Source of the DNA: Styela clava
Taxonomy: Eukaryota
Direction: 5' to 3'
DNA length: 64,000 bases
Assembly (NCBI RefSeq): GCF_964204865.1
Contig: NC_135260.1
Coordinates: 14,012,001-14,076,000 of the forward strand
How positions within the stretch are numbered: the stretch's first letter is position 1; each line of letters begins with the position of its first letter. The position numbers and the translations under genes were made by a program. The notes beneath the pieces are model-generated. The model saw only the letters and a list, made by a program, of their open reading frames with translations. It ran no database searches and was not told the DNA's origin. This document shows positions 17,424-40,262 of this stretch, piece by piece.

Positions 17424-18577
17424 ATGAAAATATTTGGTTCGAGTCTCTTTCAAAGGCGAAGCGGGGAGACGTCAGCTTTGGGAGAATTCAATTTCCAGGT
17501 CACGCCGAGAAAAGATACGAGGCCCGCCCAACTTGAAGTTGATTGTTTCAAAAAGAAGAGAGAATTTTATGAAGAAAATTCATTTTCTAGAAAATCCATT
17601 CACAAAGTGAGACAAAATTTTAACGGAAACTTCAAAAATCTGAAATATGAAAATGATTCCGATTACGGTTCAATGCCAAGAGAGCAAGAAAACGAAGTGA
17701 GTTACGACCCCGAAAAGTTACTATTTCATAAACCAGAGCAAATTTTTGATCTTATTCCCCTTAATCGTGACGTCACTCAGTACGAAGAAGACTTTTCTAT
17801 TTTCCGCAATTATGAACGGGTCAAAGTTCAACTACACCCAGAAGAGGAATGGGCAAGAAATGCAAAGACGGTTTGGTGGACAATCAAATTTAGCAGGTAA
17901 TGTATAATAACAATAATTATTTTCATTTTCTTCATTCAACATTCTTCAATATATATCAGCAAATTTAACTGCTCAATCGTTGAGGGACCATATATCACAA
18001 TACAGAATGTATAAACGGAATAATCGGAACGCAATGTTTGAGCGATTATTAATCAATTTCATTTTTGAAATAGCATCCAACAAGTCAAATATATGTTAAA
18101 CAAATTTTAGTAAAATATTTATTTTCGTAAATTCGATACTACTATTGAATGTCCTCATTGGAATTTGAATCACATCATGCGTTCGTATCAATATAATTTT
18201 TTTCATTTTGTTTCACCGAAATTATCGACAAATAATTTAATAATTTACTCATTAAAAACTAGTGATTAAAATATTTTTTAATTTTTTTCAGGCTTTGGAA
18301 AAACATATGCATCGTTACCGAGAGCAGCATAGGAGGATCATTAGTATTTTCTACAGAAGCAAAATTATCATTTTGTCAGGATGACAACGTTAAAATAACA
18401 GGAACATTTAATCGGATAAAAAGTCCTGATTTCGAACTGACATTAACATCAAAACTGAGCGAAAATGATAATCGGCGGGGTTATGTTATGATTGGAAGTC
18501 TAAAGCAAGGGCTTGCAAAAGATGGAAAGCTGGAAACGACGCATTATGCTACGGTTATGAAAAACGATTTGACATAA
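17424..18577 (+). CDS. Uncharacterised 252-aa protein, 2 coding exons (17424-17896, 18292-18577)
   Basis: The 158-aa ORF ends at AG|GTAATG. A phase-2 splice to the TTTTTTTCAG| acceptor continues in an open frame: RLWKNICIVTESSIGGSLVFSTEAKLSFCQDDNVKITGTFNRIKSPDFELTLTSKLSENDNRRGYVMIGSLKQGLAKDGKLETTHYATVMKNDLT*. A possible 5' UTR exon and promoter lie at ~16570-16891. Confidence 0.8.
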
Positions 18578-19789: not shown

Positions 19790-20470
19790 TACGGGGAATG
19801 CGGGTGACTTGAGCCACGAGGTGACTTGTTTCACCGCCGGGAATTAGCAACATGCTTTGGTGATAGGAGGCTCGCGCGCCATCTGTTAGTAGGTTGTGTC
19901 ATAACTTGCTTGCAGTCAATAAAAAAATTGGAATCGCAGCAAAAAGTGGATTTAGTGGTTGGAGGTCAAATGTTTTCTCTTACCCATATTCAATCCCGTA
20001 AAGTGATATGGCATTAGTTGAAGGGGCAGCAAAAGCGGCTATAAGAAGGCTGCAGTATTCGAGCCGCGGCGAGAGTATGTGATGTGGACCGGATGACACT
20101 CAAGCGATACATCGATAAAAAAAAAAACACGACCCACATAGGACACGCGGATACAAGAATGGCAAGTTGTAGAATATGATATTCGGTCCATAAATGGAAA
20201 CTGAACTGGCTAGTCACATTAAAACACTATCGGAAAACTACCATGGACTATCCAAAGATAAATGCCGATGTTTGGTATACGAGTTTGCAGAGAGAAACGG
20301 TATTGTTGTACCAGAAAATTCAAAAACCTACAAAAAAAGCTGTTCGGGGGTTATGGCTTTGAATGAAAGCTCGCAATAACCTCGCGATTCGATGTCCATA
20401 AGCTACTGCGTTGGCCGGAGAAACGACGTTTAGTCATCAGACAGTGGGACGGTTTCACAAAAAACCTTGT
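19790..20470 (+). mobile_element. 5' fragment of a pogo/Tigger-type (Tc1/mariner superfamily) transposon, decayed transposase
   Basis: TIR-like TACGGGGAATGCGGGTGACTTGAGCCACGAGGTGACTTG; HTH_psq-like peptide EGCSIRAAARVCDVDRMTLKRYIDKK (~20044-20125); CENP-B-type HTH METELASHIKTLSENYHGLSKDKCRCLVYEFAERNGIVVPEN (20194-); then RNNLAIRCP*ATALA...; truncated before the DDE domain. Confidence 0.8.
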
Positions 20471-21137
20471 CAAAGAAATTCTTAGTTCATAAATCCAAAT
20501 TAACAATGCTGATTACTACCATTCTACTCATCCCAACAAGATTTGTTTCATCTATCGTTTCATTACATTGCGAATGTCAAAATTTCATAGTTTGTGATGT
20601 TAATGTCTAACAATATCGAATAATTGCCGTATTTGTTGAGTTGAGCAGTTGTGAATTGAAAAAATGGCCAAATTCTGTTCGATATCAAATTGCCCACCAT
20701 CAAACAACGTACAATAAGATACAAAATATAATGAGGATTTTGATGCAAGTATGATATCCTCATCTTTTAGTCTTACAATAACGAAAATGACCTGTTAGTC
20801 CCAAAACGAACGCTATCTATGCCTGCTTTATATTCTCACAAGTTTTTTATTTTCAGATAAGTATGAACAAAAGGCTGTTTGATAAAATTAACTTAAACCA
20901 GTTGAAAATTTGCTAGTATTGAGATAGGTTATCAGACCGAAGCAAAATTAACTATGGTCGGCAATTTACTATAAAAGTTCGAACTATCTTTCAATTTAAA
21001 CAAGATATTCAATTTACGTTATCTTATCTTGATCGTATGGACTTAAATAAATATAACTTGCTGGGCCTAACATAATCATTTAATTATATTTTGTTATAAT
21101 ACATTCTACACAATCCGAAGAGAGGAACTATTAAAGT

Positions 21138-21704
21138 ATGTGCAGCAAAATCAACTCAAATCAATCCACAGAAGATCTTTTACCTTTGGTAAGCATCATT
21201 ATGCATGAGACATTTTATAGCCTAATTGAGGCAATTGCTCTTTCAACAAATATTTTTTTACAACGTAACTAATAACCAATATTTTTCTTTACAAAGTTTA
21301 GAAATATTATTGATTTTGAACGAGAATGTCAGTCCAAGACAGTACAAGTTGATTATTCCAAGAATTAAGGATATCTCACACAAGTTGGTATTAATATTTC
21401 ACGCAATTTTAGGAAAAACATTCCAAACAAAGAGTGCTCAATGATCCAAGAAATATACCGTTCAGAAATTGATGCAAATGCGGATGAAATAGAATCTAAA
21501 ATATATTACAACAAAACACACACAAAAAACTTTTCACATTACACTTGAGCTCAACTTAATATTATACCACAAAGTAATAGATCAACCCGAAAAGAAAGAA
21601 GAGATTTAGCAAGTCCACTTTCAAGAACAGGTCGATCACTAAGAAGTAATGTTCTACGGAAACAACACAGAATCAGATGTCGAAGCATGCTTTTAAAGTT
21701 GTGA
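21138..21704 (+). pseudogene. Array copy 1 of the candidate orphan gene, disrupted
   Basis: Exon-1 equivalent 21138-21188 with GTAAGC donor; acceptor mutated (TTTACAA instead of TTTACAG); 1-nt deletion near 21365 relative to the other copies. Confidence 0.4.
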
Positions 21705-23575
21705 TTTCTCGAAAATAATTGAAATATCGAAAAACTGGTATTTTTCAAGCCATTCTTTACATTGCAAGTGCAATAAGTTTATATTTTCAATATAATTTTT
21801 CCTTTAAATTTGAAATACGAATTATTTCTCCATTTATATTATTAATCAAATGTTCAACGTTTATTCTATTTTCTTGCTTGCTTATTCAGCCAATAGCTGG
21901 ATTTCATTCCATTAGAACAATAAAATTTCTTTAAGCCTAATTAGGTTATTTATTTGTATCTTATATTAAATACTTCAACAAAACAGGTTGTACAGGTATG
22001 CAATCTGTCACAGAAGACTACCGCCACACGGTGCGTAATTTCTATTTTGAATGACGTCATCTACATAAAAAAAAAAGAATCACATATAGCACACAGACAT
22101 TTTTGAAATATATAAAAGTAATAGCCTTCTAGCGGAAAATACAATCTCAAAGCACTGAAAATCAGAAAGCAATTGATCTAGTAGGAAATGAATAAAGCGA
22201 TATTTCATTAACAGAAATTAATAAACAAGAAAAGGAAAATGACATAAACTACAACAACAAAAACATCTTATTAACAAAGGAAGCTATATGTACACTTCGG
22301 ATCCAATATAGAATGAACAAAATCATTTAAAAATTTAAAAATATACATAAATGTGTTAGTGTTTTCACATAGCTGCATTCTTATGTTCAGTCAGTAAATA
22401 TAAGACGGTCGACCCTTTTTATTGCAATTCAAAAAATACAAATCTATTCTTTGATGAAAAATATATTACGTGATCTTTAGAGCAGTTAATATATATGGAA
22501 AATCCACTGATTGCAGGAAATCGGAACTGTAAATGAATGAATATATTAGGATTTAAGAATGTAACATCGATCAACTCGATTCTCTCGTGATTTTATTAGT
22601 TTCACATTTATGTATCAGAGCGGATGTCGAGTTTTGTACATGAGAAAAGTTTATATTTCATAAAGTTCACCAAAATCTTTTAAAAAATTAAAGACATAAA
22701 TTATTCCAGTATTACAGCACTTTTTACCTTGTATAAAAATTTATTTTGCACATAATGCGTTGTTATTGGGATGAAAAGGTCCATGTCAAAAAAAAAAACG
22801 AAAGATGAATTAGACCCAGTCGGACCTACGAACTGCATGGCACGCTTTCAACTCCTTCCCAAATAGCAATGCTACCATTCTTTTCATCCAATGAACCAAA
22901 AATAAGATTTGTTTCATCCATCGTTTCATTACATTGCTAATGTCAAAATTTGATAGTTTGTGATGTTAATATCTAACAATATCGCATAATTGGTGAATTT
23001 ATTGAGTTCAGCAGTTGTGAATTAAAAAATTGCCAAATTCTGTTCGATATTAAATTGCTCGCCATCAAACCTCGTACAATGTTTTGAAGGATACAAAATA
23101 TAATGGAACGTTCTCCGTTAAACCAAAAGAAACTACCGGTAGATATTATTCTTCATCGACAGAGGGATTTCGGTGCAAGAGTGATATCCTCATCTTTATG
23201 ATAACGGAAATGTCATGTTAGTTCTAAAACGAACGTTATCTATGCCTGTGTTATATTCTCACAAGTTCGGTATTTTCATAAGTAAGAACAAAAGGCTGTT
23301 TGATAAAATTTACATAAACTAATCGAAAATTTGATAGTATTAAGATATGTTATCAGTCTAAAGAAAACTTAATTATGGTCGGCAATTCACTATAAAAGTT
23401 CGAATTATCTATCTTTCAATTTAAGGATTCAATTCAATTAAGGATATTCAATAGCGTTATCTTATCTTGATCGTATAGACTTGCATAAATATAACTTGCT
23501 GGGCCTAACATAATCATTCAACTATATTTTGTCATACCACCTTCGACACAATCCAAAGAGAGGAATTAGTAAAGT

Positions 23576-24149
23576 ATGTGCAGCAAAATCAATTCAAATC
23601 AATCCACAGAAAATCTATTATCTATGGTAAGCTTCATTATGCATGAGACATTTTATATTCTAATTGAAGCAATCACCTTTTCAACAAATATTTATTCACA
23701 ACGTAACTAATAACCATTATTTATATTTCTCTTTACAGAGTTTAAAAGAATTATTGATTTTGAATGAGCATGCCAGTCCAAGACAAAACAAGTTGAATAT
23801 TCCAAGAAATAAAAGATATCTCACACAAATTGATATTACTATTTCACGCAATTTTAGGAAAAGCGTTCAAAACAAAGAGTGCTCAATGATCCAAGAAATA
23901 TACCGTTCAGGATCTGATCCAAAAGCGGATGAAATAAAATCTAAAGTAAATTACAACAAAACACAAACGAAAAACTTTTCACAATACACTGGAGCTCAAT
24001 TTAATATTATACCACAAAGTAATAGATCAAACCGAAAAAGAAGAAGAGATTTGGCAAGTCCACTTTCAACAACAGGTCGATCACTAAGAAGTAATGTTCT
24101 ACGGAAACAACACGGAATCAGATGTCGAAGCATGCTTTTAAAGTTGTGA
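23576..24149 (+). CDS. Candidate 153-aa basic orphan protein, array copy 2 (exons 23576-23626, 23739-24149)
   Basis: MCSKINSNQSTENLLSM|GTAAGC, 112-nt intron with ACTAAT branch-like motif and TTTCTCTTTACAG| acceptor, then in-frame SLKELLILNEH...KRRRDLASPLSTTGRSLRSNVLRKQHGIRCRSMLLKL*; AATAAA ~25 nt downstream. No recognised homolog. Confidence 0.45.
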
Positions 24150-24417
24150 TTTCTCGCAAATAATTGAAATATTAATAAAATCGTATTTTTCAAGTCATTC
24201 TTTACATGGCAAGTGCAATAAGTTTATATTTTCAATATAATTTTTACTCTAAATTTGAAACACAAATTATTTCTCTATTTATACTATTAATCTAATGTTC
24301 AAGGTTTATTCTATTTTCTTGCTTATTCAGCAAATAGCTGGATTTCATTCCATTAGAACAATACAATTTCTATAAGCTCAATTACTTTATTTATTTGTAT
24401 CATTTATAAAATTCTTC

Positions 24418-24784
24418 AACAAGAAATCGATGCATAAATATATGGACTCGAAGGCCGAAACGAGGTTTTACGGGTATGAAATCTGTCACCGAAGACTACC
24501 GCCACAAGGTGCGCAATTTTTATTTTTGATGACATCATCTACGTCGAAAAAAAGAATCGCATATAGCACACATACATTTTTGAGATATATAAAAGTATTA
24601 GCTTTCCAGCAAAAAATACAATTTTAAAGCACTGAAAATTAGAAAGCATTTGATCCAGAAGGTAATGAGTAAATCGATATTTCATAAAAAGAAATATACT
24701 AACAAGAAAGAAACATGACAGGCACTACGAAAACAAAAACATCTTAATAACAGAAGAAGCTATGTGTACACTTCGGGTCCAATA
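24418..24784 (-). mobile_element. Helentron-associated (DINE-1/HINE-like) non-autonomous element; one copy per array unit
   Basis: Ends AACAAGAAATCGATGCATAAATATATGGAC ... TATGTGTACACTTCGGGTCCAATA and body (CACAAGGTG, CACTGAAAATT, ACTAACAAGAA) align by eye with the free-standing element at 60033-60316. Confidence 0.65.
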
Positions 24785-26029
24785 TAGAATAAACAAAATC
24801 ATTCCAAAATTTATAAATATACATAAATGTGTTATTGTTTACACATAACTGCACTCTTATGCTCAGTCAGTAAATATAGTACGGTCGACCCTTTTTATCG
24901 CAATTCAAAAATTACAAATCTATTCTTTGCTGAATAATATATCACGTGATCTTTAGAGCAGTTTATGTATACGGAAAATCCACTGATTTCAGAAAGTCGG
25001 AACGGTAAATGAATTGATATATTAGGCTTTAAGAATGTAACATCGATTAACTCTTTTCTTTTGTGCCTTTATTAGTTTCACATTTATGTATCGAAACGGA
25101 TTTTCGAGTTTTTGTACATGAGAAAAGTTTATATTTCATGAAGTTCACCAAAATCTTTTCAAAAGATAATGACATAATTTATTCCAGTATTACAGCACTT
25201 TTTACCTTGTATAAAAATTTATTTTGCACATAATGCGTTGTTATTGGGATGAAAAGGTCCATGTCAAAAAAAAACGAAAGATGAATTAGACCCAGTCGGA
25301 TCTACGAACTGCATGGCACGCTTTTAACTCCTTCCCAAATAGCAATGCTACCATTCTTTTCATCCAATGAACCAAAAATAAGATTTGTTTCATCCATCGT
25401 TTTATTACATTGCTAATGTCAAAATTTGATAGTTTGTGATGTTAATATCTAACAATATCGAAGAATTGCCGAATTTATTGAGTTCAGCAGTTGTGAATTA
25501 AAAAATTGCCAAATTCTGTTCAATATTAAATTGCCCACCAACAAACCTCGTACAATGTTTTGAAGGATACAAAATATAATGGAACGTTCTCCGTTAAACC
25601 AAAAGAAACTAGATATTATTCTTCATCGACAGAGGGATTTCGGTGCAAGAGTGATATCCTCATCTTTATGATAACGGAAATGTCATGTTAGTTCTAAAAC
25701 GAACGCTATCTATGCCTGAGTTATATTCTCACAAGTTCGGTATTTTCAGATAAGTAAGAATAAAAGGCTGTTTGATAAAATTTACATAAACTAATCAAAA
25801 ATTTGATAGTATTAAGATATGTTATCAGTCTAAAGAAAACTTAATTATGGTCGGCAATTCACTATAAAAGTTCGAACTATCTTTCAATTTAAGCAAGATA
25901 TTCAATAGCGTTATCTTATCTTGATCGTATAGACTTGCATAAATATAACTTGCTGGGCCTAACATAATCATTCAACTATATTTTGTCATACCACCTTCTA
26001 CACAATCCAAAGAGAGGAATTAGTAAAGT

Positions 26030-26453
26030 ATGTGCAGCAAAATCAACTCAAATCAATCCACAGAAGATCTGTTATCTATGGTACGCTTCATTATGCATGA
26101 GACATTTTATATCCTAATTGAAGCAATCACCTTTTCAACAAATATTTATTCACAACGTAACTAATAACCATTATTTATATTTCTCTTTACAGAGTTTAAA
26201 AGAATTATTGATTTTGAACGAGCATGTCAGTCCAAGACAAAACAAGTTGAATATTCCAAGAAATAAAAGATATCTCACACAAATTGATATTACTATTTCA
26301 CGCAATTTTAGGAAAAGCGTTCCAAACAAAGAGTGCTCAATGATCCAAGAAATATACCGTTCAGGATCTGATCCAAAAGCGGATGAAATAAAATCTAAAG
26401 TAAATTACAACAAAACACAAACGAAAAACTTTTCACAATACACTGGAGCTTAA
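26030..26453 (+). pseudogene. Array copy 3 of the candidate orphan gene with premature stop
   Basis: Exons 26030-26080 and 26193-; CAA->TAA at 26451-26453 removes the basic C-terminus. Confidence 0.4.
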
Positions 26454-28329
26454 TTTAATATTATACCACAAAGTAATAGATCAAACCGAAAAAGAAGAAG
26501 AGATTTGGCAAGTCCACTTTCAACAACAGGTCGATCACTAAGAAGTAATGTTCTACGGAAACAACACGGAATCAGATGTCGAAGCATGCTTTTAAAGTTG
26601 TGATTTCTCGCAAATAATTGAAATATTAATAAAATCGTATTTTTCAAGTCATTCTTTACATGGCAAGTGCAATAAGTTTATATTTTCAGTATAATTTTTA
26701 CTTTAAATTTGAAATACGAATTATTTCTCTATTTATACTATTAATCTAATGTTCAACGTTTATTCTATTTTCTTGCTTATTCAGCAAATAGCTATATTTC
26801 ATTCCATTAGAACAATACAATTTCTATAAGCTCAATTACTTTATTTATTTGTATCATTTATAAAATACTTCAACATGTAATCGATGCATAAATATATGGA
26901 ATCGAAGGCCGAAACGAGGTTTTACGGGTATGAAATATGTCACAGAAGACTACCGCCACAAGGTGCGCAATTTCTATTTTTGATGACGTCAACTACGTCG
27001 AAAAAAAAATCGCATATAGCACACATACATTTTGGAGATATATAAAAGTATTAGCTTTCCAGCAAAAAATACAATTTCAAAGCACTGAAAATTAGAAAGC
27101 ATTTGATGCAGTAGGTAATGAGTAAATCGATATTTCATAAAAAGAAATATACTAACAAGAAAGAAACATGACATGAACTACAAAAACAAAAACATCTTAA
27201 TATCAGAAGAAGGTATGTGTACAACTATGAATAATATATCACGTGAACTTTAGAGCAGTTAATATATACGGAAAATCCACTGATTGCAGAAAATCGGAAC
27301 GGTAAATGAATTGATATATCAGGGTTTAAGAATGTAACATCGATTAACTCCTTTCTTTTGTGCCTTTATTAGTTTCACATTTTAGTATCGAAACGGATTT
27401 TCGAGTTTTTGTATATGAGAAAAGTTTATACTTCATGAAGTTCACCAAAATCTTTTCAAAAGATAATGACATAATTTATTCCAGTATTACAGCACTTTTT
27501 ACCTTGTATAAAAATTAATTTTGCACATAACGCGTTGTTATTGGGATGAAAAGGTCCATGTCAAAAAAAAAAAACGAAAGATGAATTAGACCCAGTCGGA
27601 CCTACGAACTGCATGGCACGCTTTCAATTCCTTCCCAAATAGCAATGCTACCATTCTTTTCATCCAATGAACCAAAAATTAGATTTGTTTCATCTATCGT
27701 TTCCTTACATTGCTAATGTCAAAATTTGATAGCTTGTGATGTTAATATCTAACAATATCGAAGAATTGCCGAATTTATTGAGTTCAGCAGTTGTGAATTA
27801 AAAAATTGCCAAATTCTGTTCAATATTAAATTGCCCACCAACAAACCTCGTACAATGTTTTGAAGGATACAAAATATAATGGAACGTTCTCCGTTAAACC
27901 AAAAGAAACTAGATATTATTCTTCATCGACAGAGGGATTTCGGTGCAAGAGTGATATCCTCATCTTTATGATAACGGAAATGTCATGTTAGTTCTAAAAC
28001 GAACGCTATCTATGCCTGAGTTATATTCTCACAAGTTCGGTATTTTCAGATAAGTAAGAACAAAAGGCTGTTTGATAAAATTTACATAAACTAATCAAAA
28101 ATTTGATAGTATTAAGATATGTTATCAGTCTAAAGAAAACTTAATTATGGTAGACAATTCACTAATAAAGTTCGAACTATCTTTCAATTTAAGCAGGATA
28201 TTCAATAGCGTTATCTTATCTTAATCGTATAGACTTGCATAAATATAACTTGCTGGGCCTAACATAATCATTCAACTATATTTTGTCATACCACCTTCTA
28301 CACAATCCGAAGAGAGGAATTAGTAAAGT

Positions 28330-28903
28330 ATGTGCAGCAAAATCAACTCAAATCAATCCACAGAAGATCTGTTATCTATGGTACGCTTCATTATGCATGA
28401 GACATTTTATATCCTAATTGAAGCAATCACCGTTTCAACAAATATTTATTCACAACGTAACTAATAACCATTATTTATATTTCTCTTTACAGAGTTTAAA
28501 AGAATTATTGATTTTGAACGAGCATGTCAGTCCAAGACAAAACAAGTTGAATATTCCAAGAAACAAAAGATATCTCACACAAATTGATATTACTATTTCA
28601 CGCAATTTTAGGAAAAGCGTTCCAAACAAAGAGTGCTCAATGATCCAAGAAATATACCGTTCAGGATCTGATCCAAAAGCGGATGAAATAAAATCTAAAG
28701 TAAATTACAACAAAACACAAACGAAAAACTTTTCACAATACACTGGAGCTCAATTTAATATTATACCACAAAGTAATAGATCAAACCGAAAAAGAAGAAG
28801 AGATTTGGCAAGTCCACTTTCAACAACAGGTCGATCACTAAGAAGTAATGTTCTACGGAAACAACACGGAATCAGATGTCGAAGCATGCTTTTAAAGTTG
28901 TGA
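28330..28903 (+). CDS. Candidate 153-aa orphan protein, array copy 4 (exons 28330-28380, 28493-28903)
   Basis: Same spliced frame as copy 2 and open; GTACGC donor, TTTACAG acceptor. Confidence 0.42.
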
Positions 28904-30631
28904 TTTCTCGCAAATAATTGAAATATTAATAAGATCGTATTTTTCAAGTCATTCTTTACATGGCAAGTGCAATAAGTTTATATTTTCAGTATAATTTTTA
29001 CTTTAAATTTGAAATACGAATTATTTCTCTATTTATACTATTAATCTAATGTTCAACGTTTATTCTATTTTCTTGCTCATTCTGCAAATAGCTGGATTTC
29101 ATTCCATTAGAACAATACAATTTCTATAAGCTCAATTACTTTATTTATTTGTATCATTTATAAAATACTTCAACATGTAATCGATGCATAAATATATGGA
29201 CTCGAAGGCCGAAACGAGGTTTTACGGGTATGAAATATGTCACAGAAGACTACCGCCACAAGGTGCGCAATTTCTATTTTTGATGACGTCAACTACGTCG
29301 AAAAAAAAAAATTGCATATAGCACACATACATTTTGGAGATATATAAAAGTATTAGCTTTCCAGCAAAAAATACAATTTTAAAGCACTGAAAATTAGAAA
29401 GCATTTGATGCAGTAGGTAATGAGTAAATCGATACTTCATAAAAAGAAATATACTAACAAGAAAGAAACATGACAGGAACTACAAAAACAAAAACATCTT
29501 AATATCAGAAGAAGCTATGTGTACAACTATGAATAATATATCACGTGATCTTTAGAGCAGTTAATATATACGGAAAATCCACTGATTGCAGAAAATCGGA
29601 ACGGTAAATGAATTGATATATTAGGCTTTAAGAATGTAACATCGATTAACTCTTTTCTTTTGTGCCTTTATTAGTTTCACATTTTAGTATCGAAACGGAT
29701 TTTCGAGTTTTTGTATATGAGAAAAGTTTATACTTCATGAAGTTCACCAAAATCTTTTCAAAAGATAATGACATAATTTATTCCAGTATTACAGCACTTT
29801 TTACCTTGTATAAAAATTAATTTTGCACATAACGCGTTGTTATTGGGATGAAAAGGTCCATGTCAAAAAAAAAAAACGAAAGATGAATTAGACCCAGTCG
29901 GACCTACGAACTGCATGGCACGCTTTCATTTCCTTCCCAAATAGCAATGCTACCATTCTTTTCATCCAATGAACCAAAAATAAGATTTGTTTCATCTATC
30001 GTTTCATTACATTGCTAATGTCAAAATTTGATAGTTTGTGATGTTAATATCTAACAATATCGAATAATTGTCGAATTTATTGAGTTCAGCAGTTGTGAAT
30101 TAAAAAATTGTCAAATTCTGTTCAATATTAAATTGCTCACCATCAAACCTCGTACAATGTTTTGAAGGATACAAAATATAATGGAACGTTCTCCGTTAAA
30201 CCAAAAGAAACTAGATATTATTCTTCATCGACAGAGGGATTTCGGTGCAAGAGTGATATCCTCATCTTTATGATAACGGAAATGTCATGTTAGTTGTAAA
30301 ACGAACGCTATCTATGCCTGTGTTATATTCTCACAAGTTCGGTATTTTCAGATAAGTAAGAACAAAAGGCTGTTTGATAAAATTTACATAAACTAATCGA
30401 AAATTTGATAGTATTAAGATATGTTATCAGTCTAAAGAAAACTTAATTATGGTCGGCAATTCACTATAAAAGTTAAAACTATCTTTCAATTTATGCAGGA
30501 TATTTAATAGCGTTATCTTATCTTGATCGTATAGACTTGCATAAATATAACTTGCTGGGCCTAACATAATCATTCAACTATATTTTGTCATACCACCTTC
30601 TACACAATCCAAAGAGAGGAATTAGAAAAGT

Positions 30632-31205
30632 ATGTGCAGCAAAATCAACTCAAATCAATCCACAGAATATCTATTATCTATGGTAAGCTTCATTATGCAT
30701 GAGACATTTTATATCCTAATTGAAGCAATCACCTTTTCAACAAATATTTATTCACAACGTAACTAATAACCATTATTTATATTTCTCTTTACAGAGTTTA
30801 AAAGAATTATTGATTTTGAACGAGCATGTCAGTCCAAGACAAAACAAGTTGAATATTCCAAGAAACAAAAGATATCTCACACAAATTGATATTACTATTT
30901 CACGCAATTTTAGGAAAAGCGTTCCAAACAAAGAGTGCTCAATGATCCAAGAAATATACCGTTCAGGATCTGATCCAAAAGCGGATGAAATAAAATCTAA
31001 AGTAAATTACAACAAAACACAAACGAAAAACTTTTCACAATACACTGGAGCTCAATTTAATATTATACCACAAAGTAATAGATCAAACCGAAAAAGAAGA
31101 AGAGATTTGGCAAGTCCACTTTCAACAACAGGTCGATCACTAAGAAGTAATGTTCTACGGAAACAACACGGAATCAGATGTCGAAGCATGCTTTTAAAGT
31201 TGTGA
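30632..31205 (+). CDS. Candidate 153-aa orphan protein, array copy 5 (exons 30632-30682, 30795-31205)
   Basis: Same spliced frame and open; GTAAGC donor, TTTACAG acceptor. Confidence 0.45.
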
Positions 31206-32933
31206 TTTCTCGCAAATAATTGAAATATTAATAAGATCGTATTTTTCAAGTCATTCTTTACATGGCAAGTGCAATAAGTTTATATTTTCAGTATAATTTT
31301 TACTTTAAATTTGAAATACGAATTATTTCTCTATTTATACTATTAATCTAATGTTCAACGTTTATTCTATTTTCTTGCTTATTCAGCAAATAGCTGGATT
31401 TCATTCCATTAGAACAATACAATTTCTATAAGCTCAATTACTTTATTTATTTGTATTATTTATAAAATACTTCAACATGTAATCGATGCATAAATATATG
31501 GACTCGAAGGCCGAAACGAGGTTTTACGGGTATGAAATATGTCACAGAAGACTACCGCCACAAGGTGCGCAATTTCTATTTTTGATGACGTCAACTACGT
31601 CGAAAAAAAAAAATTGCATATAGCACACATACATTTTGGAGATATATAAAAGTATTAGCTTTCCAGCAAAAAATACAATTTTAAAGCACTGAAAATTAGA
31701 AAGCATTTGATGCAGTAGGTAATGAGTAAATCGATACTTCATAAAAAGAAATATACTAACAAGAAAGAAACATGACAGGAACTACAAAAACAAAAACATC
31801 TTAATATCAGAAGAAGCTATGTGTACAACTATGAATAATATATCACGTGATCTTTAGAGCAGTTAATATATACGGAAAATCCACTGATTGCAGAAAATCG
31901 GAACGGTAAATGAATTGATATATTAGGCTTTAAGAATGTAACATCGATTAACTCTTTTCTTTTGTGCCTTTATTAGTTTCACATTTATGTATCGAAACGG
32001 ATTTTCGAGTTTTTGTACATGAGAAAAGTTTATATTTCATGAAGTTCACCAAATTCTTTTCAAAAGATAATGACATCATTTATTCCAGTATTACAGCACT
32101 TTTTACCTTGTATAAAAATTTATTTTGCACATAATGCGTTGTTATTGGGATGAAAAGGTCCATGTCAAAAAAAAAACGAAAGATGAATTAGATCCAGTCG
32201 GACCTACGAACTGCATGGCACGCTTTCAACTCCTTCCCAAATAGCAATGCTACCATTCTTTACATCCAATGAACCAAAAATAAGATTTGTTTCATCCATC
32301 GTTTCATTACATTGCTAATGTCAAAATTGATAGCTTGTGATGTTAATATCTAACAATATCGAATAATTGCCGAATTTATTGAGTTCAGCAGTTGTGAATT
32401 AAAAAATTGCCAAATTCTGTACAATATTGAATTGCTCACCGTCAAACCTCGTACAATGTTTTGAAGGATACAAAATATAATGGAACGTTCTCCGTTAAAC
32501 CAAAAGAAACTAGATATTATTCTTCATCGACAGAGGGATTTCGGTGCAAGAGTGATATCCTCATCTTTATGATAACGGAAATGTCATGTTAGTTGTAAAA
32601 CGAACACTATCTATGCCTGTGTTATATTCTCACAAGTTCGGTATTTTCAGATAAGTAAGAACAAAAGGCTGTTTGATAAAATTTACATAAACTAATCGAA
32701 AATTTGATAGTATTAAGATATGTTATCAGTCTAAAGAAAACTTTATTATGGTCGGCAATTCACTATAAAAGTTCGAACTATCTTTCAATTTAAGCAGGAT
32801 ATTCAATAGCGTTATCTTATCTTGATCGTATAGACTTGCATAAATATAACTTGCTGGGCCTAACATAATCATTCAACTATATTTTGTCATACCACCTTCT
32901 TCTATACAATCCAAAGAGAGGAATTAGTAAAGT

Positions 32934-33525
32934 ATGTGCAGCAAAATCAACTCAAATCAATCCACAGAGGATCTATTATCTATGGTAAGCTTCATTATGC
33001 ATGAGACATTTTATATCCTAATTGAAGCAATCACCTTTTCAACAAATATTTATTCACAACGAAACTAATACACATTATTTATATTTCTCTTTACAGAGTT
33101 TAAAAGAATTATTAATGTTGAACGAGCATGTCAGTCCAAGACAAAACAAGTTGAATATTCCAAGAAATAAAAGATATCTCACACAAATTGATATTAATAT
33201 TTCACGCAATTTTAGGAAAAGCATTCCAAACGAAGAGTGCTTAATGATCCAAGGAAAATACCGTTCAGGATTTGATCCAAATGCGGATGAAATAGAATCT
33301 AAAGTTTATTACAACAAAACACAAACTAATAACTTTTCACAATACCCTGGAGCTCAACTTAGTATTCGACCACAAAGTAATAGATCAACCCGAAAAGGAA
33401 GAAGAGATTTAGCAAGTCCACTTTCAACAACAGGTCGATCACTAAGAAGTAATGTTCTACGGAAACAACACGGAATCAGATGTCGAAGCATGCTTTTAAA
33501 GTTGGGATTTCTCACAAATAATTGA
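32934..33525 (+). CDS. Candidate 159-aa orphan protein, array copy 6 (exons 32934-32984, 33097-33525)
   Basis: Open spliced frame despite many substitutions; stop TGA->GGA extends the C-terminus by GFLTNN. Confidence 0.45.
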
Positions 33526-35383
33526 AATATTAATAAAATCGTATTTTTCAAGTCATTCTTTACATGGCAAGTGCAATAAGTTTATATTTTCAATATAATT
33601 TTTACTTTAAATTTGAAATACGAATTCTTTCTCTATTTATACTATTAATCTAATGTTCAACGTTTATTCTATTTTCTTGCTTATTCAGCAAATAGCTGGA
33701 TTTCATTCCATTAGAACAATACATTTTCTATAAGCTCAATTACTTTATTTATTTGTATCATTTATAAAATACTTCCACAAGAAATCGATGCATAAATATA
33801 TGGACTCGAAGGCCGAAACGAGGTTTTACGGGTATGGAATATGTCACAGAAGACTACCGCCACAAGGTGCGCAATTTCTATTTTTGATGACGTCATCTAC
33901 GTCGAAAAAAAGAATTGCATATAGCACACATACATTTTTGAGATATATAAAAGTATTAGCTTTCTAGCAAAAATACAATTTTGAAGCACTGAAAATTAGA
34001 AAGCATTTGATCCAGTAGGTAATGGGTAAATCGATATTTCATAAAAAGAAATATACTAACAAGAAAGAAACATGATAGGAACTACAAAAACAAAAAACAT
34101 CTTAATAACAGAAGAAGCTATGTGTACACTTCGGGTCCAGTATAGAATAAACAAAATCATTCCAAAATTTATAAATATACATAAATGTGTTATTGTTTTC
34201 ACATAGCTGCACTCTTATGCTCAGTCAGCAAATATAGTACGGTCGCCCTTTTTTTATCGCAATTCAAAAATTACAAATCTATTCATTGCTGAATAATATA
34301 TCTCGTGATCTGTAGAGCAGTTAATATATACGGGAAATCTACTGATTGCAGAAAATCAGAACTGTAAATGAATTGATATAATAGGCTTTAAGAATGTAAC
34401 ATCGATTTACTCGATTCTCTCGTGCTTTTATTAGTTTCACGTTTATGTATCAAAGTGGATTTTGATTTTTGTACACGAAAAAAAAATATATTTCATAAAG
34501 TTCACCAAAATCTTTTCAAAAGATAATGACATAAATTATTCCAGTATTACAACACTTGTTACCTTATATAAAAAATCGTTTTGCACAAAATGCGTTATTA
34601 TTGGGATGAAAAGGTCTATGTCAAAAATAAAAAAAAGATGAATTAGGCCGATTCGGGACTTACAAACTGTAAGGGACGCTTTCAACTTCTTTCCAAATAG
34701 CAATGCTAATTACTATCATTGTACTCATCCCTTCAACCAAAAACAAGATTTCTTTCATCTATTGTTTCATTACATTGCGAACGTCAAAATTTGATAGTTT
34801 GTGATTTTATTAACTAACAATATCGAATAAATGCCGAATTTGTTGAGTTCCGCAGTTGTGAATCAAAAAACTGCAAACTGCAAAATCACCAGCAAATCTC
34901 GTACAATGTTTTGAAAAATACAAAATGCAATGGAACGTTCTCCTTTAGGCCAAAAGAAACTAGGTATTATTCTTTATCGGCAGAAGGATTTTGATGCACG
35001 AATGATATCCTCATCTTTTATTAAGTCTTTATGATAACGGAAATATCATGTTAGTCCCAAAGCGAACGCTATCTATGCATGTGTTATATTCTCACAAGTT
35101 CGGTATTTTCAGATAAGTATGAACAAAAGGCTGTTTGATAAAATTTACATAAACTAATCGAAAATTTGCTAGTATTAAGATAAGTTATCAGTCAAAAGAA
35201 AAGGTAATTATGGTCGGCAATTCACTATAAAAGTTCGAATTATCTTTCAAGATATTCAATAGCGTTATCTTATCTTGATCGTATGGACTTGCATAAATAT
35301 AACTTGCTGGGCCTAACATAATCATTTAACTATATTTTGTCATAACACTTTCTACACAATCCAAAGAGAGGAATTATTGAAGT

Positions 35384-35942
35384 ATGTGCAGCAAAATCAA
35401 CTCATATCAAACCACAGAAGATCTTTTATCTATTGTAAGCTTCATTATGCATGAGACATTTTACAGTATAATTAAAGGAAACACCTTTTCATCAAATATG
35501 TTTTCACAACGTAACTAATAACTATTAATTTTCTTTACAGAGTTTAAAAGAATTATTGATTTTGAACGAACATGTCAGTCCAAGACAAAACAAGTTGATT
35601 ATTCCAAGAAATAAAAGGTATATCAGACAAATTGATATTAATATTCCACGCAAGTTCAAGAAATGCATTCCAAACAAAGAGTGCTCAATGATCCAAGAAA
35701 TATACCGTTCAGGATCTGATTCAAAAGCGGATGAAATAAAATCTAAAGTAAATTACAACAAAACACAAACGAAAAACTTTTCACAATACACTGGAGCTCA
35801 ACTTAATATTATACCACAAAGTAATAGATCAAACCGAAAAAGAAGAAGAGATTTGGCAAGTCCACTTTCAACAACAGGTCGATCACTAAGAAGTAATGTT
35901 CTACGGAAACAACACGGAATCAGATGTCGAAGCATGCTCTAA
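35384..35942 (+). CDS. Candidate 150-aa orphan protein, array copy 7 (exons 35384-35434, 35541-35942)
   Basis: MCSKINSYQTTEDLLSI|GTAAGC ... TTCTTTACAG|SLKELLILNEH...RCRSML*; frame stays open in a diverged copy. Confidence 0.42.
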
Positions 35943-38388
35943 AGTTGTGATTTCTCGCAAATAATTGAAATATTAATAAAATCGTATATTTCAAGTCATT
36001 CTTTACATGGCAAGTTCAATAAGTTTATATTTTGAATATAATTTTTACTTTAAATTTGAAATACGAATTATTTCTCTATTTATACTATTAATCTAATGTT
36101 CAACGTTTATTCTATTTCCTTGCTTATTCAGCTAATAGCTGGATTTCATTCCATTAGAACAATACAATTTCTATAAGCTCAATTACTTAAATTAATTTGT
36201 ATCATTTATAAAATACTTCAACAAGAAATCGATGCATAAATATATGGACTCGAAGGCCGAAACGAGGTTTTACGGGTATGAAATATGTCACAGAAGACTA
36301 CCGCCACAAGGTGCGCAATTTCTATTTTTGATGACGTCATCTACATCGAAAAAAAGAATCGCATATAGCACACATACATTTTGAGATATATAAAAGTATT
36401 AGCTTTCTAGCAAAAATACAATTTTAAAGCACTGAAAATTAGAAAGCATTTGATCCAGTAGGTAATGAGTAAATCGATATTTCATGAAAAGAAATATACT
36501 AACAAGAAAGAAACATGACAGGAACTACAAAAACAAAAACATCTTAATAAGAGAAGAAGCTCTGTGTACACTTCGGGTCCAATATAGAATAAACAAAATC
36601 ATTCCAAAATTCATAAATATACATAAATGTGTTATTGTTTTCACATAGCTGCACTCTTATGCTCAGTCAGTGAATATAGTACGGCCGACCCTTTTTATCG
36701 CAATTCAAAAATTACAAATCTATTCATTGCTAAATAATATATCTCGTGATCTGTAGAGCAGTTAATATATACGGGAAATCTACTGATAGCAGAAAATCGG
36801 AACTGTAAATGAATTGATATATTAGGTTTTAAGAATGTAACATCGAATAACTCGATTCTCTCGTGCTTTTATTAGTTTCACATTTATGTATCAAAGTGGA
36901 TTTCGACATTTGTACACGAAAAAAGTTTATATTTCATAAAGTTCACCAAAATCTTTTCAAAAGATAATGACATAAATTATTCCAGTATTACAACACTTGT
37001 TACGTTATATGTAAATTCGTTTTGCACATAATACGTTATTATTGGGATGAAAAGGTCTTTGTCAAAAATAACGAAAGATGAATTAGACCGAGTCAGACTT
37101 ACAAACTGCATGGGACGCTTTCAACTTCTTCCCAAATAGCAATGCTAATTACTACCATTCTACTCATCCCATCAACCAAAAACAAGATTTGTTTCAACTA
37201 TCATTTTCTTACCTTGCGAATGTCAATATTTGATAGTTTGTGATGTTAATAACTGACAATATCGATATTTGCAATCGATATTTGCAATCCATTCAAGTGC
37301 AATAAGTTTATATTTTCATTATGATTTTTACTTTAAATTTGAAATACGAATTGTTTCTTAAATTATACTATTAATCTAATGTTTCAACGTTTATTCTATT
37401 TTCTTGCTTGTTCAACCAATAGCTCGATTTCATTCCATTAGATTGATTAGAACAATAAAATTTCTGTAAGCTCAATTAGTTTATTTATTTATATCTTATA
37501 TTAAATACTTCAACAAGAAATCGATGCTCAAATATATGGACTCGAAGGCCGAAACGAGGTTGTACGGGTATGCAATCTGTCACAGTAGACTACCGCCACA
37601 AGGGGCGCAATTTTCTATTTTTGATGACGTCATCCACATCGAAAAGAAAGAATTGCATATAGCATACAGACATTTTCGAAATATATAAAAGTAATAGCTT
37701 TCTAGCAAAAAATACAATTTTGATACTATAACACAAAAAGGAACACGACATGTACTACAACAACAAAAACATCTCATTAACAGAAGAAGATATATGTACA
37801 CTTCGGGTCCAATATAGATGAATAAAATCATTTCAAAATTTAAAAATATCCATAAATGTGTTATTGTTTTCACATAGCTGCATTCTAATGCTCAGTCATT
37901 GAATACAGTACGGTCGTCCCTTTTTATCGCAATTCGAAAGATACAAATCTATCTTTTGCTAAATAACATATCACGTGATCTTTAGAGCAGTTAATTAATA
38001 TACAAGGAAGATCCACTGATTGCAGAAAATCGGGACTGTAAATGAATTGATATATTAAACTTCAAGAATATAACATTGATTAATTCGATTCTCTTGTGCT
38101 TTTATTAGTTTCACATTTATGTATCCAAGCGTATTTTTGAGTTTGTTAACAAGAAAAAATTTTCTATCCCATAAAGTTCACCAAAATCTTTTTAAAAGAT
38201 AATGACATAATTTATTCAGTTATACAACACTTGTTACCTTATATAAAAATTAGTTTTGCACATAATGTGGTATTATTGGAATGAATAGTCTATGTCAAAA
38301 TAACGATAGATGAATTAGTCCAAGTCGGACTTACAAACTGCATAGCACGTATTCTACTTCTCTCCCAAACAGCAATGCTAATACTACT

Positions 38389-40262
38389 GTAATTCGTATG
38401 AATGTTGTGCCTTGTCCTCTAACACGGAGAGGTATTTTTTCAATGGTAAGTCAGGTATTTGACCCATTAGGATTTGTCCAGTCATTCATTTTGCCGGCAA
38501 AACTTACTCTTCGCTAGTCGTGCGATAAAGGTTATGGGGACAATCAGCTGTTGGAAAGATTTTAGGAGAGTGTATAAAATGCCGAGAAAGATCTTCTCGT
38601 ACAGGTGAGCGGTGGATGGCAGACCTTCCCAGTTGTAGATTTGTTCCTGGAAAGAAACCGTTCGAATTTACATTCGTTGACTACTTTTGCCCAATCAAGG
38701 TCAAGTTTGGTCAAAATGAATACAAGAGTTATGGATGCCGTATTAATTGCATGGTCACACGTGCTGTACATATTGAAGTTGAGAGTCTCTTGATCTTCAA
38801 GCGTTTTCCGATTCACAGACAGACGCTCGCGACCTATTCACATATTTTCGGATAATGGTACAAATTTTATAGGCGGAGAGAAGGAGTTGAGAGATGGAAT
38901 TAGAAACTGGAATCAACATGTAATAGACGAATCGTTATCACAAAAAGGAATTCAATGGCACTTCTCACCTCCATTGGCCAGTCATCAATCAGGTGTCGTG
39001 GAGAGATTAGTTCGAGAAGTCAAGAAAACATTACGTGCTATCACTGATAGTCGATCATTTACAGATTATTCATTGTGGTCCTTCTTAACTGGCGTTAGAG
39101 AAATATTAAACGATGGACCATTCACACCACTAAGTGATGATCCTACGGACTTAAATGTTTTGACACCAAATTCAATTCTAATTGCCAAACTTGATCCATC
39201 ACTGCCTTCAGACAAATTTATGAAGACCGATGAATATAGAACAACATGGCGATATTCACAAAGGCTTCTAGGTTTATTCTGGGATAGATGGAGGAAAGAA
39301 CATTTGCCTCTGCTACAAGAACTACAAAAATGGCACTCTACACAAAGAAATCTGCAAGTTGGCGATTTGGTGTTGATGATTGATGATAGTTCCCCTCGCA
39401 ATCATTGGCCGAAAGCTATTGTTGATGAGAAATACCCTGACAAGCATGGTATTGTTCGAAGGTCCGTACTGCAAATAGTGAAATGCACATACACACATAT
39501 TGTACGAAATGCACCTATTTACAACACACATAGAATTTGACGCATTGTATATAACACGGAAAGAATTAATCTTGCACCACATTCCTAACTTTTTTCTTAG
39601 GGATTCTCGTTTACCATATTTACGAGGATCCAATGGTGCTCATTCTTTCAGATTAGGTATTTCTGATTATTTTTTGCGTGTTCCACACATTGTGTTGTTT
39701 GAACATTTCACTTTGAAAATTACACAAAATGCTTTTTATTTTCTCTAATTTTGGCCCGGTATGTAAGAAATGTTTCCCCGTTAATTATGAGCACTCGGTT
39801 GTGTCCCAGAAAAGTGTTTCGCAATATCTATTTTTTGCAATCCTGCCATTCTTGCGATAATCGTTCAATTTAATAGGTGTAGTACATTCATATTCGGTTA
39901 AATAAAGTGATTAATATCCAAAATTTGATATTAATAATTAATTCCATGTATTATTCCCAATGGTTAATACATGAGGAGTCCCAAACATATATTTTATTGA
40001 GCCAATTTGGTTGTATATTCTGACCAATAATTTGGCATTTGTAAATTCTCGCCGATTTCTTCTTTTTGTGGTTTTAGTGAGCGAACCTCTGTTCCTTAAG
40101 CTCCGGAATCTGTCAATTTGTAAGTCGTATTTTTCATGTTTGTTTTATTTATTTAGCTAGGAGTGATGATCATAAATTAGATTAAATTGTGTGTAATACT
40201 GGAATAAACTGACTCACTGATGTTCATTACTACTGCGATAATGCAATAAAGTTAAAGCAACA
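38389..40262 (+). mobile_element. 5'-truncated, internally deleted BEL/Pao LTR retrotransposon (RNase H/A17 fragment, integrase, 3' LTR)
   Basis: PLTRRGIFSMVSQVFDPLGFVQSFILPAKL (~38415-38510); C-x2-C plus MADLP...PFEFTFVDYFCP...VTRAVHIEV; SDNGTNF, WHFSPPLASHQSGVVERLVREVK, LTPNSIL, FWDRWRKE, LQVGDLVL...PRNHWP, all typical of BEL/Pao pol. PPT-like TTGGCCCGGTA is followed by TGT at 39762 (LTR start); the LTR right end is approximate. Confidence 0.88.
38887..39540 (+). pseudogene. BEL/Pao integrase core and C-terminal domain fragment
   Basis: 217-aa ORF with integrase catalytic E region (GVVERLVREVK) and the C-terminal GDLVL/WP motif; upstream part lies in another frame (38616-38855). Confidence 0.85.

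What the first reader, a model, noticed from the sequence alone, without database searches (positions are those of the whole stretch)
20504..38388. 17.9-kb tandem array amplifying a candidate spliced orphan gene together with a Helentron-type element
Seen: eight head-to-tail units. Each full unit has a conserved ATG exon, a GT donor, a branch-like ACTAAT, a pyrimidine-rich CAG acceptor (lost in copy 1), a ~135-codon second exon and a DINE-1/HINE-like element. The spliced frame is open in 5 of 7 copies, including the diverged copies 6 and 7. The product is a Lys/Arg/Ser/Asn-rich ~153-aa protein with an NRKRRR NLS-like motif and no family I recognise. Inference: a young lineage-specific multicopy gene (for example a germline or chromatin-binding basic protein), or a captured gene fragment amplified as a macrosatellite. 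The reading frame is not certain.
Basis: partly seen in the sequence, partly recalled or inferred. Interest (0 to 1): 0.8.

Follow-up and report, generated by a model that had tools for sequence, protein, structure and literature searches.

The report
Tandem array of a small sea-squirt gene
A 17.9-kb head-to-tail array in the sea squirt Styela clava repeats a small, spliced, expressed gene for a basic, mostly disordered protein found almost only in this species. Each unit also carries a dead rolling-circle transposon; the genes are already in RefSeq as "uncharacterized", so this is a tidy but fairly ordinary case.

Summary
Window 20494-38387 is one array with a 2.30-2.45 kb period: seven gene-bearing units plus a leading partial unit and a final exon-less one. 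Outside its ~365-bp transposon, the unit occurs nowhere else in the 377-Mb genome.

- A likely-RNA run has a contig joining 28380 to 28493 (GT..AG, 112 nt skipped) with no coverage in the intron. A DNA run lacks this joint.
- Five open copies equal RefSeq Styela clava proteins LOC120347665, -725, -541, -542 and -685 (150-159 aa).
- A 39%-identical paralogue (LOC120347680) 56 kb upstream keeps the same two-exon structure.

An exhaustive HMM search found only one further relative, on an unnamed ENA contig.

Among array copies, codons 1-100 of exon 2 evolve neutrally (syn 10, nonsyn 43, stop 3). The last ~30 residues are nearly invariant and are shared with the paralogue. They form the only confidently predicted helix.

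The repeat in each unit is a genuine non-autonomous Helentron (HINE). It shares both termini with 10-kb Rep-helicase-endonuclease elements in the same genome. It is a passenger, because the array junction lies elsewhere.

Function is unknown. Interest is modest.

The parts
20494..38387 (+). Whole tandem array. It holds 8 phase-to-phase units of ~2.3-2.45 kb and begins and ends with the same ~25-bp stretch.
21138..21704 (+). Unit u1 gene copy, dead. Exon 1 is 21138-21188. The acceptor CAG has become CAA, there is a 1-nt deletion, and TGA/TAA stops lie in exon 2 (from 21295).
   Evidence: A u1-like spliced contig that uses the AG 2 nt downstream is seen.
23576..23626 (+). u2 exon 1 (17 codons, MCSKINSNQSTENLLSM), followed by donor GTAAGC.
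   Evidence: Equals residues 1-17 of P0001 (LOC120347665).
23739..24149 (+). u2 exon 2 (136 codons plus stop). Together with exon 1 it corresponds to RefSeq LOC120347665 (153 aa).
26030..26603 (+). u3 gene copy, dead. Exon 1 is 26030-26080 and exon 2 starts at 26193. CAA has become TAA at codon 87 (26451-26453).
28330..28903 (+). u4 gene (LOC120347725). Exon 1 is 28330-28380, the intron 28381-28492 and exon 2 28493-28903. High RNA-type coverage continues to about 29082-29104 (3' UTR).
   Evidence: joint 28380/28493, GT..AG, depth 222.6, intron bin depth 0. Also.
30632..31205 (+). u5 gene (LOC120347541). Exon 1 is 30632-30682 and exon 2 30795-31205.
32934..33525 (+). u6 gene (LOC120347542, 159 aa). 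Exon 1 is 32934-32984 and exon 2 33097-33525. The stop TGA has become GGA, which adds 6 residues.
35384..35942 (+). u7 gene (LOC120347685, 150 aa). Exon 1 is 35384-35434 and exon 2 35541-35942. A 1-nt deletion near the end shortens the tail.
24420..24782 (-). Non-autonomous Helentron (HINE) in u2, on the opposite strand to the gene and ~270 nt after the stop codon. The same insertion sits at the equivalent place in every unit: about 21979-22306, 26874-27222, 29174-29524, 31476-31826, 33778-34140, 36222-36582 and within 37500-37820. In u3-u5 its 5' tip is removed by a shared ~150-bp deletion.
37261..37289 (.). 13-bp repeat x2.2 at the joint where u7 (cut at unit offset 2021) meets the last partial unit.
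37294..38387 (+). Last partial unit (unit offsets 770-1910). It holds 3'-flank sequence plus the HINE but no exons.
19990..20479 (.). Left-flank dispersed repeat. At least 15 genomic copies of ~80% identity all end at the same point, 14 nt before the array.
38388..39540 (+). Right-flank retrotransposon relic. A 147-bp repeat segment is followed by an integrase/DUF5641 ORF at 38887-39540. It abuts the array directly.

Best explanation
This is a single-locus tandem gene array on Styela clava chromosome-scale contig C14. One 2.45-kb ancestral segment was duplicated head to tail. That segment held a complete two-exon gene, its flanks and an already inserted non-autonomous Helentron. The array then expanded and was partly homogenised by unequal crossing-over and gene conversion. 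The newest units (u3-u5) sit in the centre and the older, more diverged units at the edges (inferred).

The gene is transcribed and spliced exactly as predicted (shown). It encodes a ~153-aa basic (pI 10.7), Ser/Asn/Arg/Lys-rich, largely disordered protein.

Two short modules are under protein-level constraint. One is the LKELL.L(N/D)E start of exon 2. The other is a C-terminal block, R(R/K).RR..(A/S)SPL(S/T)...SLR..V.R(K/R)QHG.(R/K)C, which forms a basic amphipathic helix. The ~100 residues between them drift neutrally. Individual copies die at the neutral rate; two of the seven are dead.

The most likely working model (inferred, not shown) is as follows. The conserved C-terminal basic helix and the adjacent Arg-cluster/SP site act as a docking or targeting module, with a nuclear or nucleic-acid/partner-binding role. 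The array serves dosage in the stages or tissues where it is strongly expressed.
For: Array and uniqueness:
- Searches show the array. Searches show that both halves of the unit match only this locus. One search shows that only a ~300-bp part is dispersed.

Splicing and expression:
- In run X5 one contig at depth 222.6 skips 112 nt with GT..AG, exactly 28380/28493.
- The intron bin has depth 0, while exon 2 plus ~190 nt downstream has depth 234-907 and the rest of the unit 5-50.
- X7 shows the same profile. DNA run X1 has no such joint, and the assembly holds no intron-less copy.
- Four runs of one study hold the transcript, and four runs from two other studies hold none of its words.

Annotation:
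- Searches show that the five open copies equal RefSeq XP_ models of 150-159 aa.

Coding status:
- The paralogue LOC120347680 is 39% identical, has an open 155-codon exon 2 and a homologous exon 1 ending ..LLAM|gtaag, and has the acceptor at the same place.
- Between paralogues the C-block has pN 0.25 against pS 0.44, and the N-block pN 0.21 with saturated pS. These include Ser AGT/TCA and Leu TTG/CTT switches.
- Within the array the substitution rate is 0.187 per site in codons 1-100 against 0.056 in codons 101-136 (p=9e-4).
- Among 12 annotated protein variants, 35 of 85 middle positions vary against 2 of 29 in the C-block (p=4.5e-4).

Structure:
- AlphaFold gives mean pLDDT 53.6. The only segment above 70 is helix 133-152.
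Against: - In codons 1-100 the changes among copies (syn 10, nonsyn 43, stop 3) match the neutral expectation for the whole exon (14.6 / 43.7 / 3.7).
- Exon 2 is no better conserved than the intron, UTR or HINE. Most of the protein therefore shows no selection inside the array.
- Two of the seven copies are dead.
- A relative's contig (organism B) carries a 4-nt deletion inside the ORF.
- X5 and X7 are only guessed to be RNA by the tool. Their tissue or stage is unknown.
- There is no protein-level evidence (proteomics or ribosome profiling).
- There is no recognisable domain (Pfam, PDB), so the functional model is inference from motifs alone.
Confidence: 0.72

Rival explanations
1. The array is a decaying, selectively neutral macrosatellite. 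It amplified a gene copy by chance, its transcripts are non-functional or act only as RNA, and any protein function rests with the single-copy paralogue LOC120347680.
For: - Syn/nonsyn/stop counts are neutral over most of exon 2.
- The coding region is no more conserved than its flanks.
- Two of the seven copies are dead.
- A u1-like dead copy is still transcribed and spliced to a shifted AG.
- The array composition differs between the two RefSeq releases.
Against: - The C-terminal ~30 codons are significantly conserved in all open copies and in 12 protein variants.
- Contig depth in the likely-RNA runs is 10-100 times higher over the exons than over the rest of the unit.
- Five copies keep the ATG, donor, acceptor and frame at up to 15% unit divergence.
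Confidence: 0.18
2. The array was made by the Helentron itself. In this reading a rolling-circle element captured the gene, and read-through replication produced tandem copies, as in the Helentron-borne satellite arrays of oysters and Drosophila.
For: - Every unit carries one HINE.
- The genome has at least 17 Helitron-like Rep matches lying in open frames of ~600 to 2579 aa, so the family may be active.
- Helentrons are known to carry tandem repeats (PMC4067079, PMC7492417).
Against: - Both HINE termini lie inside the unit (u2 24420-24782), whereas the unit-to-unit junction phase is at offset ~1910. That is about 570 nt from the nearest HINE end.
- The HINE lies on the opposite strand to the gene.
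- The gene-bearing remainder of the unit exists nowhere else in the genome.
- No Rep ORF lies in the window.
Confidence: 0.05
3. The array is an assembly artefact, that is, an over-expansion of one or two real copies.
For: Long near-identical tandem repeats are prone to mis-assembly. The earlier RefSeq release had different sequences under the same LOC numbers.
Against: - Units differ by 1.5-15% and have private indels, stops and a shared 150-bp deletion.
- An independent DNA run has contigs that cross the unit-to-unit joint (goes back 2301).
- An ENA contig of 8.2 kb carries three such ORFs.
Confidence: 0.03

Closest known systems
Gene-bearing macrosatellites and tandem multicopy gene arrays, such as human D4Z4/DUX4, RS447/USP17L and CT47, or Drosophila Stellate/Su(Ste). 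This comparison comes from general knowledge and was not tested here.
   Same: Kilobase-scale head-to-tail units each hold a complete transcription unit. Central units are homogenised and edge units diverged. Live and dead copies are mixed, and array content apparently varies between assemblies.
   Different: This array is small (8 units). It sits in an ascidian, and the encoded protein has no known domain. The gene is spliced within each unit. Copy-number polymorphism and any epigenetic behaviour were not tested.
Helentron and its non-autonomous derivatives, HINE/DINE-1 (Thomas et al. 2014, PMC4067079).
   Same: The ~365-bp element in each unit shares ~290 nt at its 5' end and ~45 nt at its 3' end with ~10.3-kb elements encoding Rep, PIF1 helicase and a C-terminal AP-type endonuclease. 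It has subterminal inverted repeats (GGACACGAAG / CTTCGTGTCC), a 3' palindrome (GAGCnnnGCTC) a few nt from the end, and T-rich boundaries.
   Different: It has no sequence relation to Drosophila DINE-1 itself. The autonomous partner here also carries an N-terminal UCH ubiquitin-hydrolase domain. The 3' subTIR lies about 25-35 nt from the end, against 38-60 in the mite families. The element did not generate the array.
RefSeq Styela clava 'uncharacterized protein' models LOC120347665, -725, -541, -542, -685 and the paralogue LOC120347680.
   Same: They are identical to the products of u2, u4, u5, u6 and u7 and of the upstream paralogue. The gene models therefore already exist.
   Different: No name, function or paper is attached to them. 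The array structure, the selection pattern, the conserved C-terminal module and the HINE passenger are not described anywhere I could search.

Membership tests
Helentron-associated interspersed element (HINE) | Termini shared with an autonomous element encoding Rep, helicase and an AP-type endonuclease. | tested here: met
   The profile of the element hits upstream of, and in opposite orientation to, three autonomous copies and downstream of one. The 2549-aa ORF has Helitron_like_N, PIF1 and, in its last 270 aa, Exo_endo_phos (E=7e-7, 29.6 bits against a cut-off of 24.5).
Helentron-associated interspersed element (HINE) | Subterminal inverted repeats, with the 5' one 2-4 nt from the end, plus a short palindrome near the 3' end (PMC4067079). 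| tested here: met
   The element runs 5' TT-GGACACGAAG ... CTTCGTGTCC-ATATATTT-GAGCnnnGCTC-TCTTG 3'. The 3' subTIR lies somewhat closer to the end than in the mite families.
Helentron-associated interspersed element (HINE) | Insertion into T-rich or TT targets, with T runs at the boundaries. | tested here: inconclusive
   The flanks of 9-11 copies are T-rich on both sides. No empty sites were examined.
Drosophila DINE-1 proper | Sequence membership in the DINE-1 core family of drosophilids. | not tested
   The host is an ascidian, so only the architecture is comparable. No DINE-1 sequence was compared.
Gene-bearing tandem array (macrosatellite) | At least 5 head-to-tail units of more than 1 kb at one locus, each with a complete transcription unit. 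| tested here: met
Gene-bearing tandem array (macrosatellite) | Units are transcribed. | tested here: met
   One search shows a spliced contig and an exon-restricted depth profile in X5 and X7. The tool only guesses that these runs are RNA. The missing intron and the absence of the joint from the DNA run and the assembly support RNA.
Gene-bearing tandem array (macrosatellite) | Copy number or content is polymorphic between individuals. | tested here: inconclusive
   The two RefSeq releases and an ENA contig give mosaic variants that are not present in this window. No read-depth or long-read population data were used.
Taxonomically restricted (orphan) protein-coding gene | No detectable homologue outside a narrow lineage. 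| tested here: met
   HMM profile search of 1.84 billion representatives gave 3 clusters: the array, LOC120347680 and an unnamed 124-aa ENA protein. Word searches are. Pfam gave nothing, PDB nothing and JGI metagenomes nothing. Other tunicate genomes could not be searched directly.
Taxonomically restricted (orphan) protein-coding gene | Evidence that the ORF is truly coding. | tested here: met
   The two-exon ORF is conserved in a 39%-identical paralogue, with synonymous-biased change in the two conserved blocks. The C-block is constrained within the array.
   K+R is about 20%, and there is no Pfam domain. The tissue of expression could not be tested.

The most novel reading that the evidence does not exclude
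The invariant C-terminal module (Arg cluster, SPLS, then a basic amphipathic helix ending QHG.(R/K)C) may define a new styelid-restricted family of small disordered proteins. In that reading the array is maintained for dosage in a particular stage or tissue, and the free-running middle region reflects conflict-type or relaxed evolution, as in multicopy germline genes of other animals.
Probability: 0.3. Interest if true: 0.5.

Novelty: new member of a known kind. Interest (0 to 1): 0.3.

Why it matters
This is a clean, fully resolved example of how a lineage-restricted gene becomes multicopy in a chordate relative. It shows one founding duplication with matching end phases, later central homogenisation, copy death at the neutral rate, and constraint confined to a short C-terminal module. 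It also supplies a testable motif for six 'uncharacterized' RefSeq genes.

As a by-product, it shows that Styela clava harbours apparently intact Helentrons and hundreds of HINE derivatives. The published genome paper does not mention these.

None of this overturns current understanding.

Tried and rejected
- **Wrong frame at first.** I started exon 2 one base late. That frame gave pN/pS 0.47 but is full of stops. The corrected frame gives neutral counts.
- **Unit as a transposon interior: rejected.** Apart from the HINE, the unit matches only this locus.
- **Known RNA families or tRNAs in the array:** none.
- **TRF missed the array**, because its period exceeds 500.
- **No database matches.** Pfam, PDB sequence profile and the JGI metagenome scan found nothing. 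No paper names the LOC identifiers.
- **Fold search not run.** The model is mostly below pLDDT 50, so any matches would be meaningless.
- **Spliced product handled exon by exon.** I searched exon 2 alone and did not join the exons myself. Exon 1 (17 aa) is too short to search alone. The full-length forms I used (P0001 and others) are database proteins returned by the searches.
- **Rolling-circle origin of the array: rejected** on junction phase.


Full report
**Observation**

The window is contig C14:14012001-14076000 of a 377-Mb assembly. The assembly proved to be Styela clava: the array's products are identical to RefSeq S. clava proteins.

Direct-repeat analysis and a MAFFT alignment of the units show seven full units. 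They start at 21003, 23441, 25895, 28195, 30497, 32799 and 35249, with periods of 2300-2454 bp. TRF missed the array because its period limit is 500. Central units u2-u5 are 97-98.5% identical. u1 is ~91%, u6 ~92% and u7 ~85% identical to them.

BLAST against a doubled reference unit places the left edge at unit offset ~1910-1937 and the right edge at offset ~1910. A local alignment shows the same ~25-bp stretch at both ends, at 20494-20518 and 38363-38387. The array is therefore eight phase-to-phase units.

The last unit is broken. u7 stops at offset 2021 (37265), a 13-bp x2.2 repeat follows, and the sequence resumes at offset 770 (37294). The eighth unit therefore has no exons.

**Uniqueness**

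With the whole unit as query, only a ~300-bp part (u4 ~29165-29493) matched elsewhere in the genome, with more than 700 first-look candidates. The gene-bearing 906 bp and the distal 977 bp matched only this array. The unit is therefore not a transposon interior.

**Gene model**

All seven copies keep a 51-nt ATG exon and a GT donor. u2-u7 keep ACTAAT and the TTTACAG acceptor, while u1 has TTTACAA.

Exon 2 has 136 codons. Its state in each copy is as follows:
- u2, u4 and u5 are open.
- u6 is open but has lost its stop, which adds 6 aa.
- u7 is open but a 1-nt deletion ends it 3 residues short (133 codons).
- u1 is broken by a 1-nt deletion and stops.
- u3 is broken by TAA at codon 87.

A 161-codon stop-free stretch arose in 1 of 2000 shuffles of the unit.

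**Transcripts**

Contigs of four public runs were laid on one unit, 27950-30250. X5 and X7 each hold ~60 M letters of contigs and are guessed by the tool to be RNA.

- In X5 one contig at depth 222.6 skips 112 nt with GT..AG ends. Given the stated +1 ambiguity, the joint is 28380/28493, which is the predicted junction translated into u4 coordinates.
- The intron bin has depth 0. Exon 2 plus ~190 nt downstream has depth 234-907, and the rest of the unit 5-50.
- X7 shows the same profile.
- The DNA run X1, about the size of the genome, has no such joint. The assembly has no intron-less copy. I therefore take the joined form to be RNA.
- A second X5 contig has a u1-like exon 1 end joined 2 nt further downstream. 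That is what the u1 acceptor mutation predicts, so a dead copy is also transcribed.
- Four runs of one 2020 study hold the transcript, and four runs of two other studies hold none of its words. This suggests condition-specific expression. Samples are coded, so the tissue is unknown.

**Annotation and relatives**

I searched exon 2 alone and did not join the exons myself. Exon 1, at 17 aa, is too short to search. The word search returned three clusters of 153-aa S. clava 'uncharacterized proteins'.

Their members map onto the window as follows:

| Protein | RefSeq locus | Unit |
|---|---|---|
| P0001 | LOC120347665 | u2 |
| P0004 | LOC120347725 | u4 |
| P0005 | LOC120347541 | u5 |
| P0014 | LOC120347542 (159 aa) | u6 |
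| P0006 | LOC120347685 (150 aa) | u7 |

A six-frame search of the genome itself found two more relatives upstream on C14:
- A 39%-identical open frame lies at C14:13976581-13976988, 56 kb upstream.
- A broken copy lies at C14:13988401.

The first is RefSeq LOC120347680 (176 aa). Its exon 1 ends ..LLAM|gtaaga and its acceptor is ttgcag|AGC, at positions homologous to those in the array. The second shares only exon 2 and downstream sequence with it, at 88% identity and with frameshifts.

HMMER with a family profile against 1.84 billion cluster representatives found only the array, LOC120347680 and one unnamed 124-aa ENA protein, P0017. Pfam, PDB and JGI metagenomes gave nothing. No paper names the loci.

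**Selection**

Distinct changes from the array consensus in the true frame are syn 12, nonsyn 47 and stop 3. The neutral expectation under the observed mutation spectrum is 14.6 / 43.7 / 3.7. Exon 2 is not better conserved than the intron, UTR or HINE. Most of the protein therefore drifts.

Codons 101-136 behave differently:
- They change at 0.056 per site against 0.187 for codons 1-100 (p=9e-4).
- Among 12 annotated protein variants from two RefSeq releases, 35 of 85 middle positions vary against 2 of 29 in residues 118-146 (p=4.5e-4).
- Against the paralogue, DNA similarity survives only at the start of exon 2 and in this C-block.
- There pN is 0.21-0.25 while pS is 0.44 or higher, with synonymous family switches such as AGT/TCA Ser and TTG/CTT Leu.
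- P0017 shares the same block.

AlphaFold2 on the family alignment gives mean pLDDT 53.6. The only confident element is a helix at residues 133-152.

**The interspersed element**

Alignment of dispersed copies defines a ~365-390-bp element. The genome has at least 17 Helitron-like Rep matches lying in open frames of ~600 to 2579 aa.

In three autonomous copies, the element's profile positions ~86-370 match about 1 kb upstream of the ORF and in the opposite orientation. In one copy its first ~45 positions match 1.5 kb downstream of the ORF. In the ORF's orientation the ~10.3-kb element and the short element therefore share a 5' end and a 3' end:
- The 5' end reads TTGGACACGAAG...
- The 3' end reads ...CTTCGTGTCCATATATTTGAGCnnnGCTCTCTTG.

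The 2549-aa ORF carries UCH, DUF6570, Helitron_like_N and PIF1. Scanned on its own, its last 270 aa match Exo_endo_phos (E=7e-7, above the cut-off).

SubTIRs, a 3' palindrome, T-rich boundaries and an endonuclease-encoding partner are the features by which Thomas et al. define Helentrons and HINEs (PMC4067079).

In the array the element lies on the minus strand, ~270 nt after the stop codon, at the same site in all units. Both of its ends are internal to the unit, and the nearer one is ~570 nt from the junction phase. It was therefore inserted before the first duplication and was copied passively.

**How the array arose and behaves (inferred)**

One duplication of a 2.45-kb segment created the junction. 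Unequal exchange then expanded the array.

- u3-u5 share a ~150-bp deletion and are 97.8-98.5% identical, so they are the youngest.
- Divergence is mosaic. For example, u1 against u4 is 2.4% in one region and 9-17% elsewhere.
- Annotated variants from another assembly are recombinants of u4-like and u6-like segments.
- Both patterns indicate gene conversion.

On the left, a dispersed repeat ends at 20479, 14 nt before the array, and all of its genomic copies end at the same point. On the right, retrotransposon-derived sequence starts at 38388.

**Verdict**

The observation and most of the interpretation are correct. The thing is a lineage-restricted, expressed, spliced multicopy gene with a short constrained C-terminal module and a HINE passenger.

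The gene models are already in RefSeq without a name. The kind of structure, a tandem gene array or gene-bearing macrosatellite, is well known. The function remains unknown. My preferred model, a docking or targeting helix on a disordered basic protein amplified for dosage, is inference.

**Limits**

- The RNA status of X5 and X7 is inferred, and their tissue is unknown.
- Other tunicate genomes could not be searched.
- An earlier scan note on the same stretch (s1-807513) described the equal end phase. I confirmed that. I could only partly confirm its 'two truncated transposons'.

Noticed in passing
G000:C8:1957526-1965172 (L056); also C2:22672788-22683100, C4:10546000 region, C10:22708000 region: Apparently intact ~10.3-kb Helentrons, each with a single 2429-2579-aa ORF. 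The ORF carries an N-terminal UCH ubiquitin hydrolase, DUF6570, Rep, PIF1 helicase and a C-terminal AP endonuclease. Copies are 93-99% identical to each other, so the family may be recently active. The S. clava genome paper does not mention Helitrons.
   Followed up: partly
G000:C14:13976204-13976968 (L037 1124-1968) and C14:13988115-13988520 (L038): An older two-exon paralogue (LOC120347680, 176 aa) lies 56 kb upstream of the array. There is also a partial, frameshifted duplicate of its exon 2 that lacks exon 1.
   Followed up: yes
window 38388-39540: A retrotransposon relic abuts the array. A 147-bp segment here (38389-38535) is tandemly repeated at 799-bp spacing in other copies on C13. It is joined directly to an integrase/DUF5641 part that lies 1-3 kb away in other copies, so this copy has an internal deletion.
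   Followed up: partly
window 41153-42624 (-): Two overlapping ORFs of a reverse-transcriptase element (RVT_1, E=2e-33). A ~165-bp piece of the unit's HINE-like sequence also matches near window 60100-60266.
   Followed up: no
window 28760 (u4 coordinates), run X6: Runs labelled as a different organism (B) hold the unit at 90-99% identity. One contig has a 4-nt deletion inside exon 2. This is either a close relative with a broken copy or another haplotype.
   Followed up: no
window 44671-45693 (-), 46768-47469 (-), 17424-17900 (+), 61313-61849 (+): Long ORFs with no Pfam match. The one at 46768-47469 looks multi-pass hydrophobic. They are possibly exons of neighbouring genes.
   Followed up: no
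window 19990-20479: A dispersed ~490-bp repeat. At least 15 copies of ~80% identity all end at the same base, 14 nt before the array starts.
   Followed up: partly
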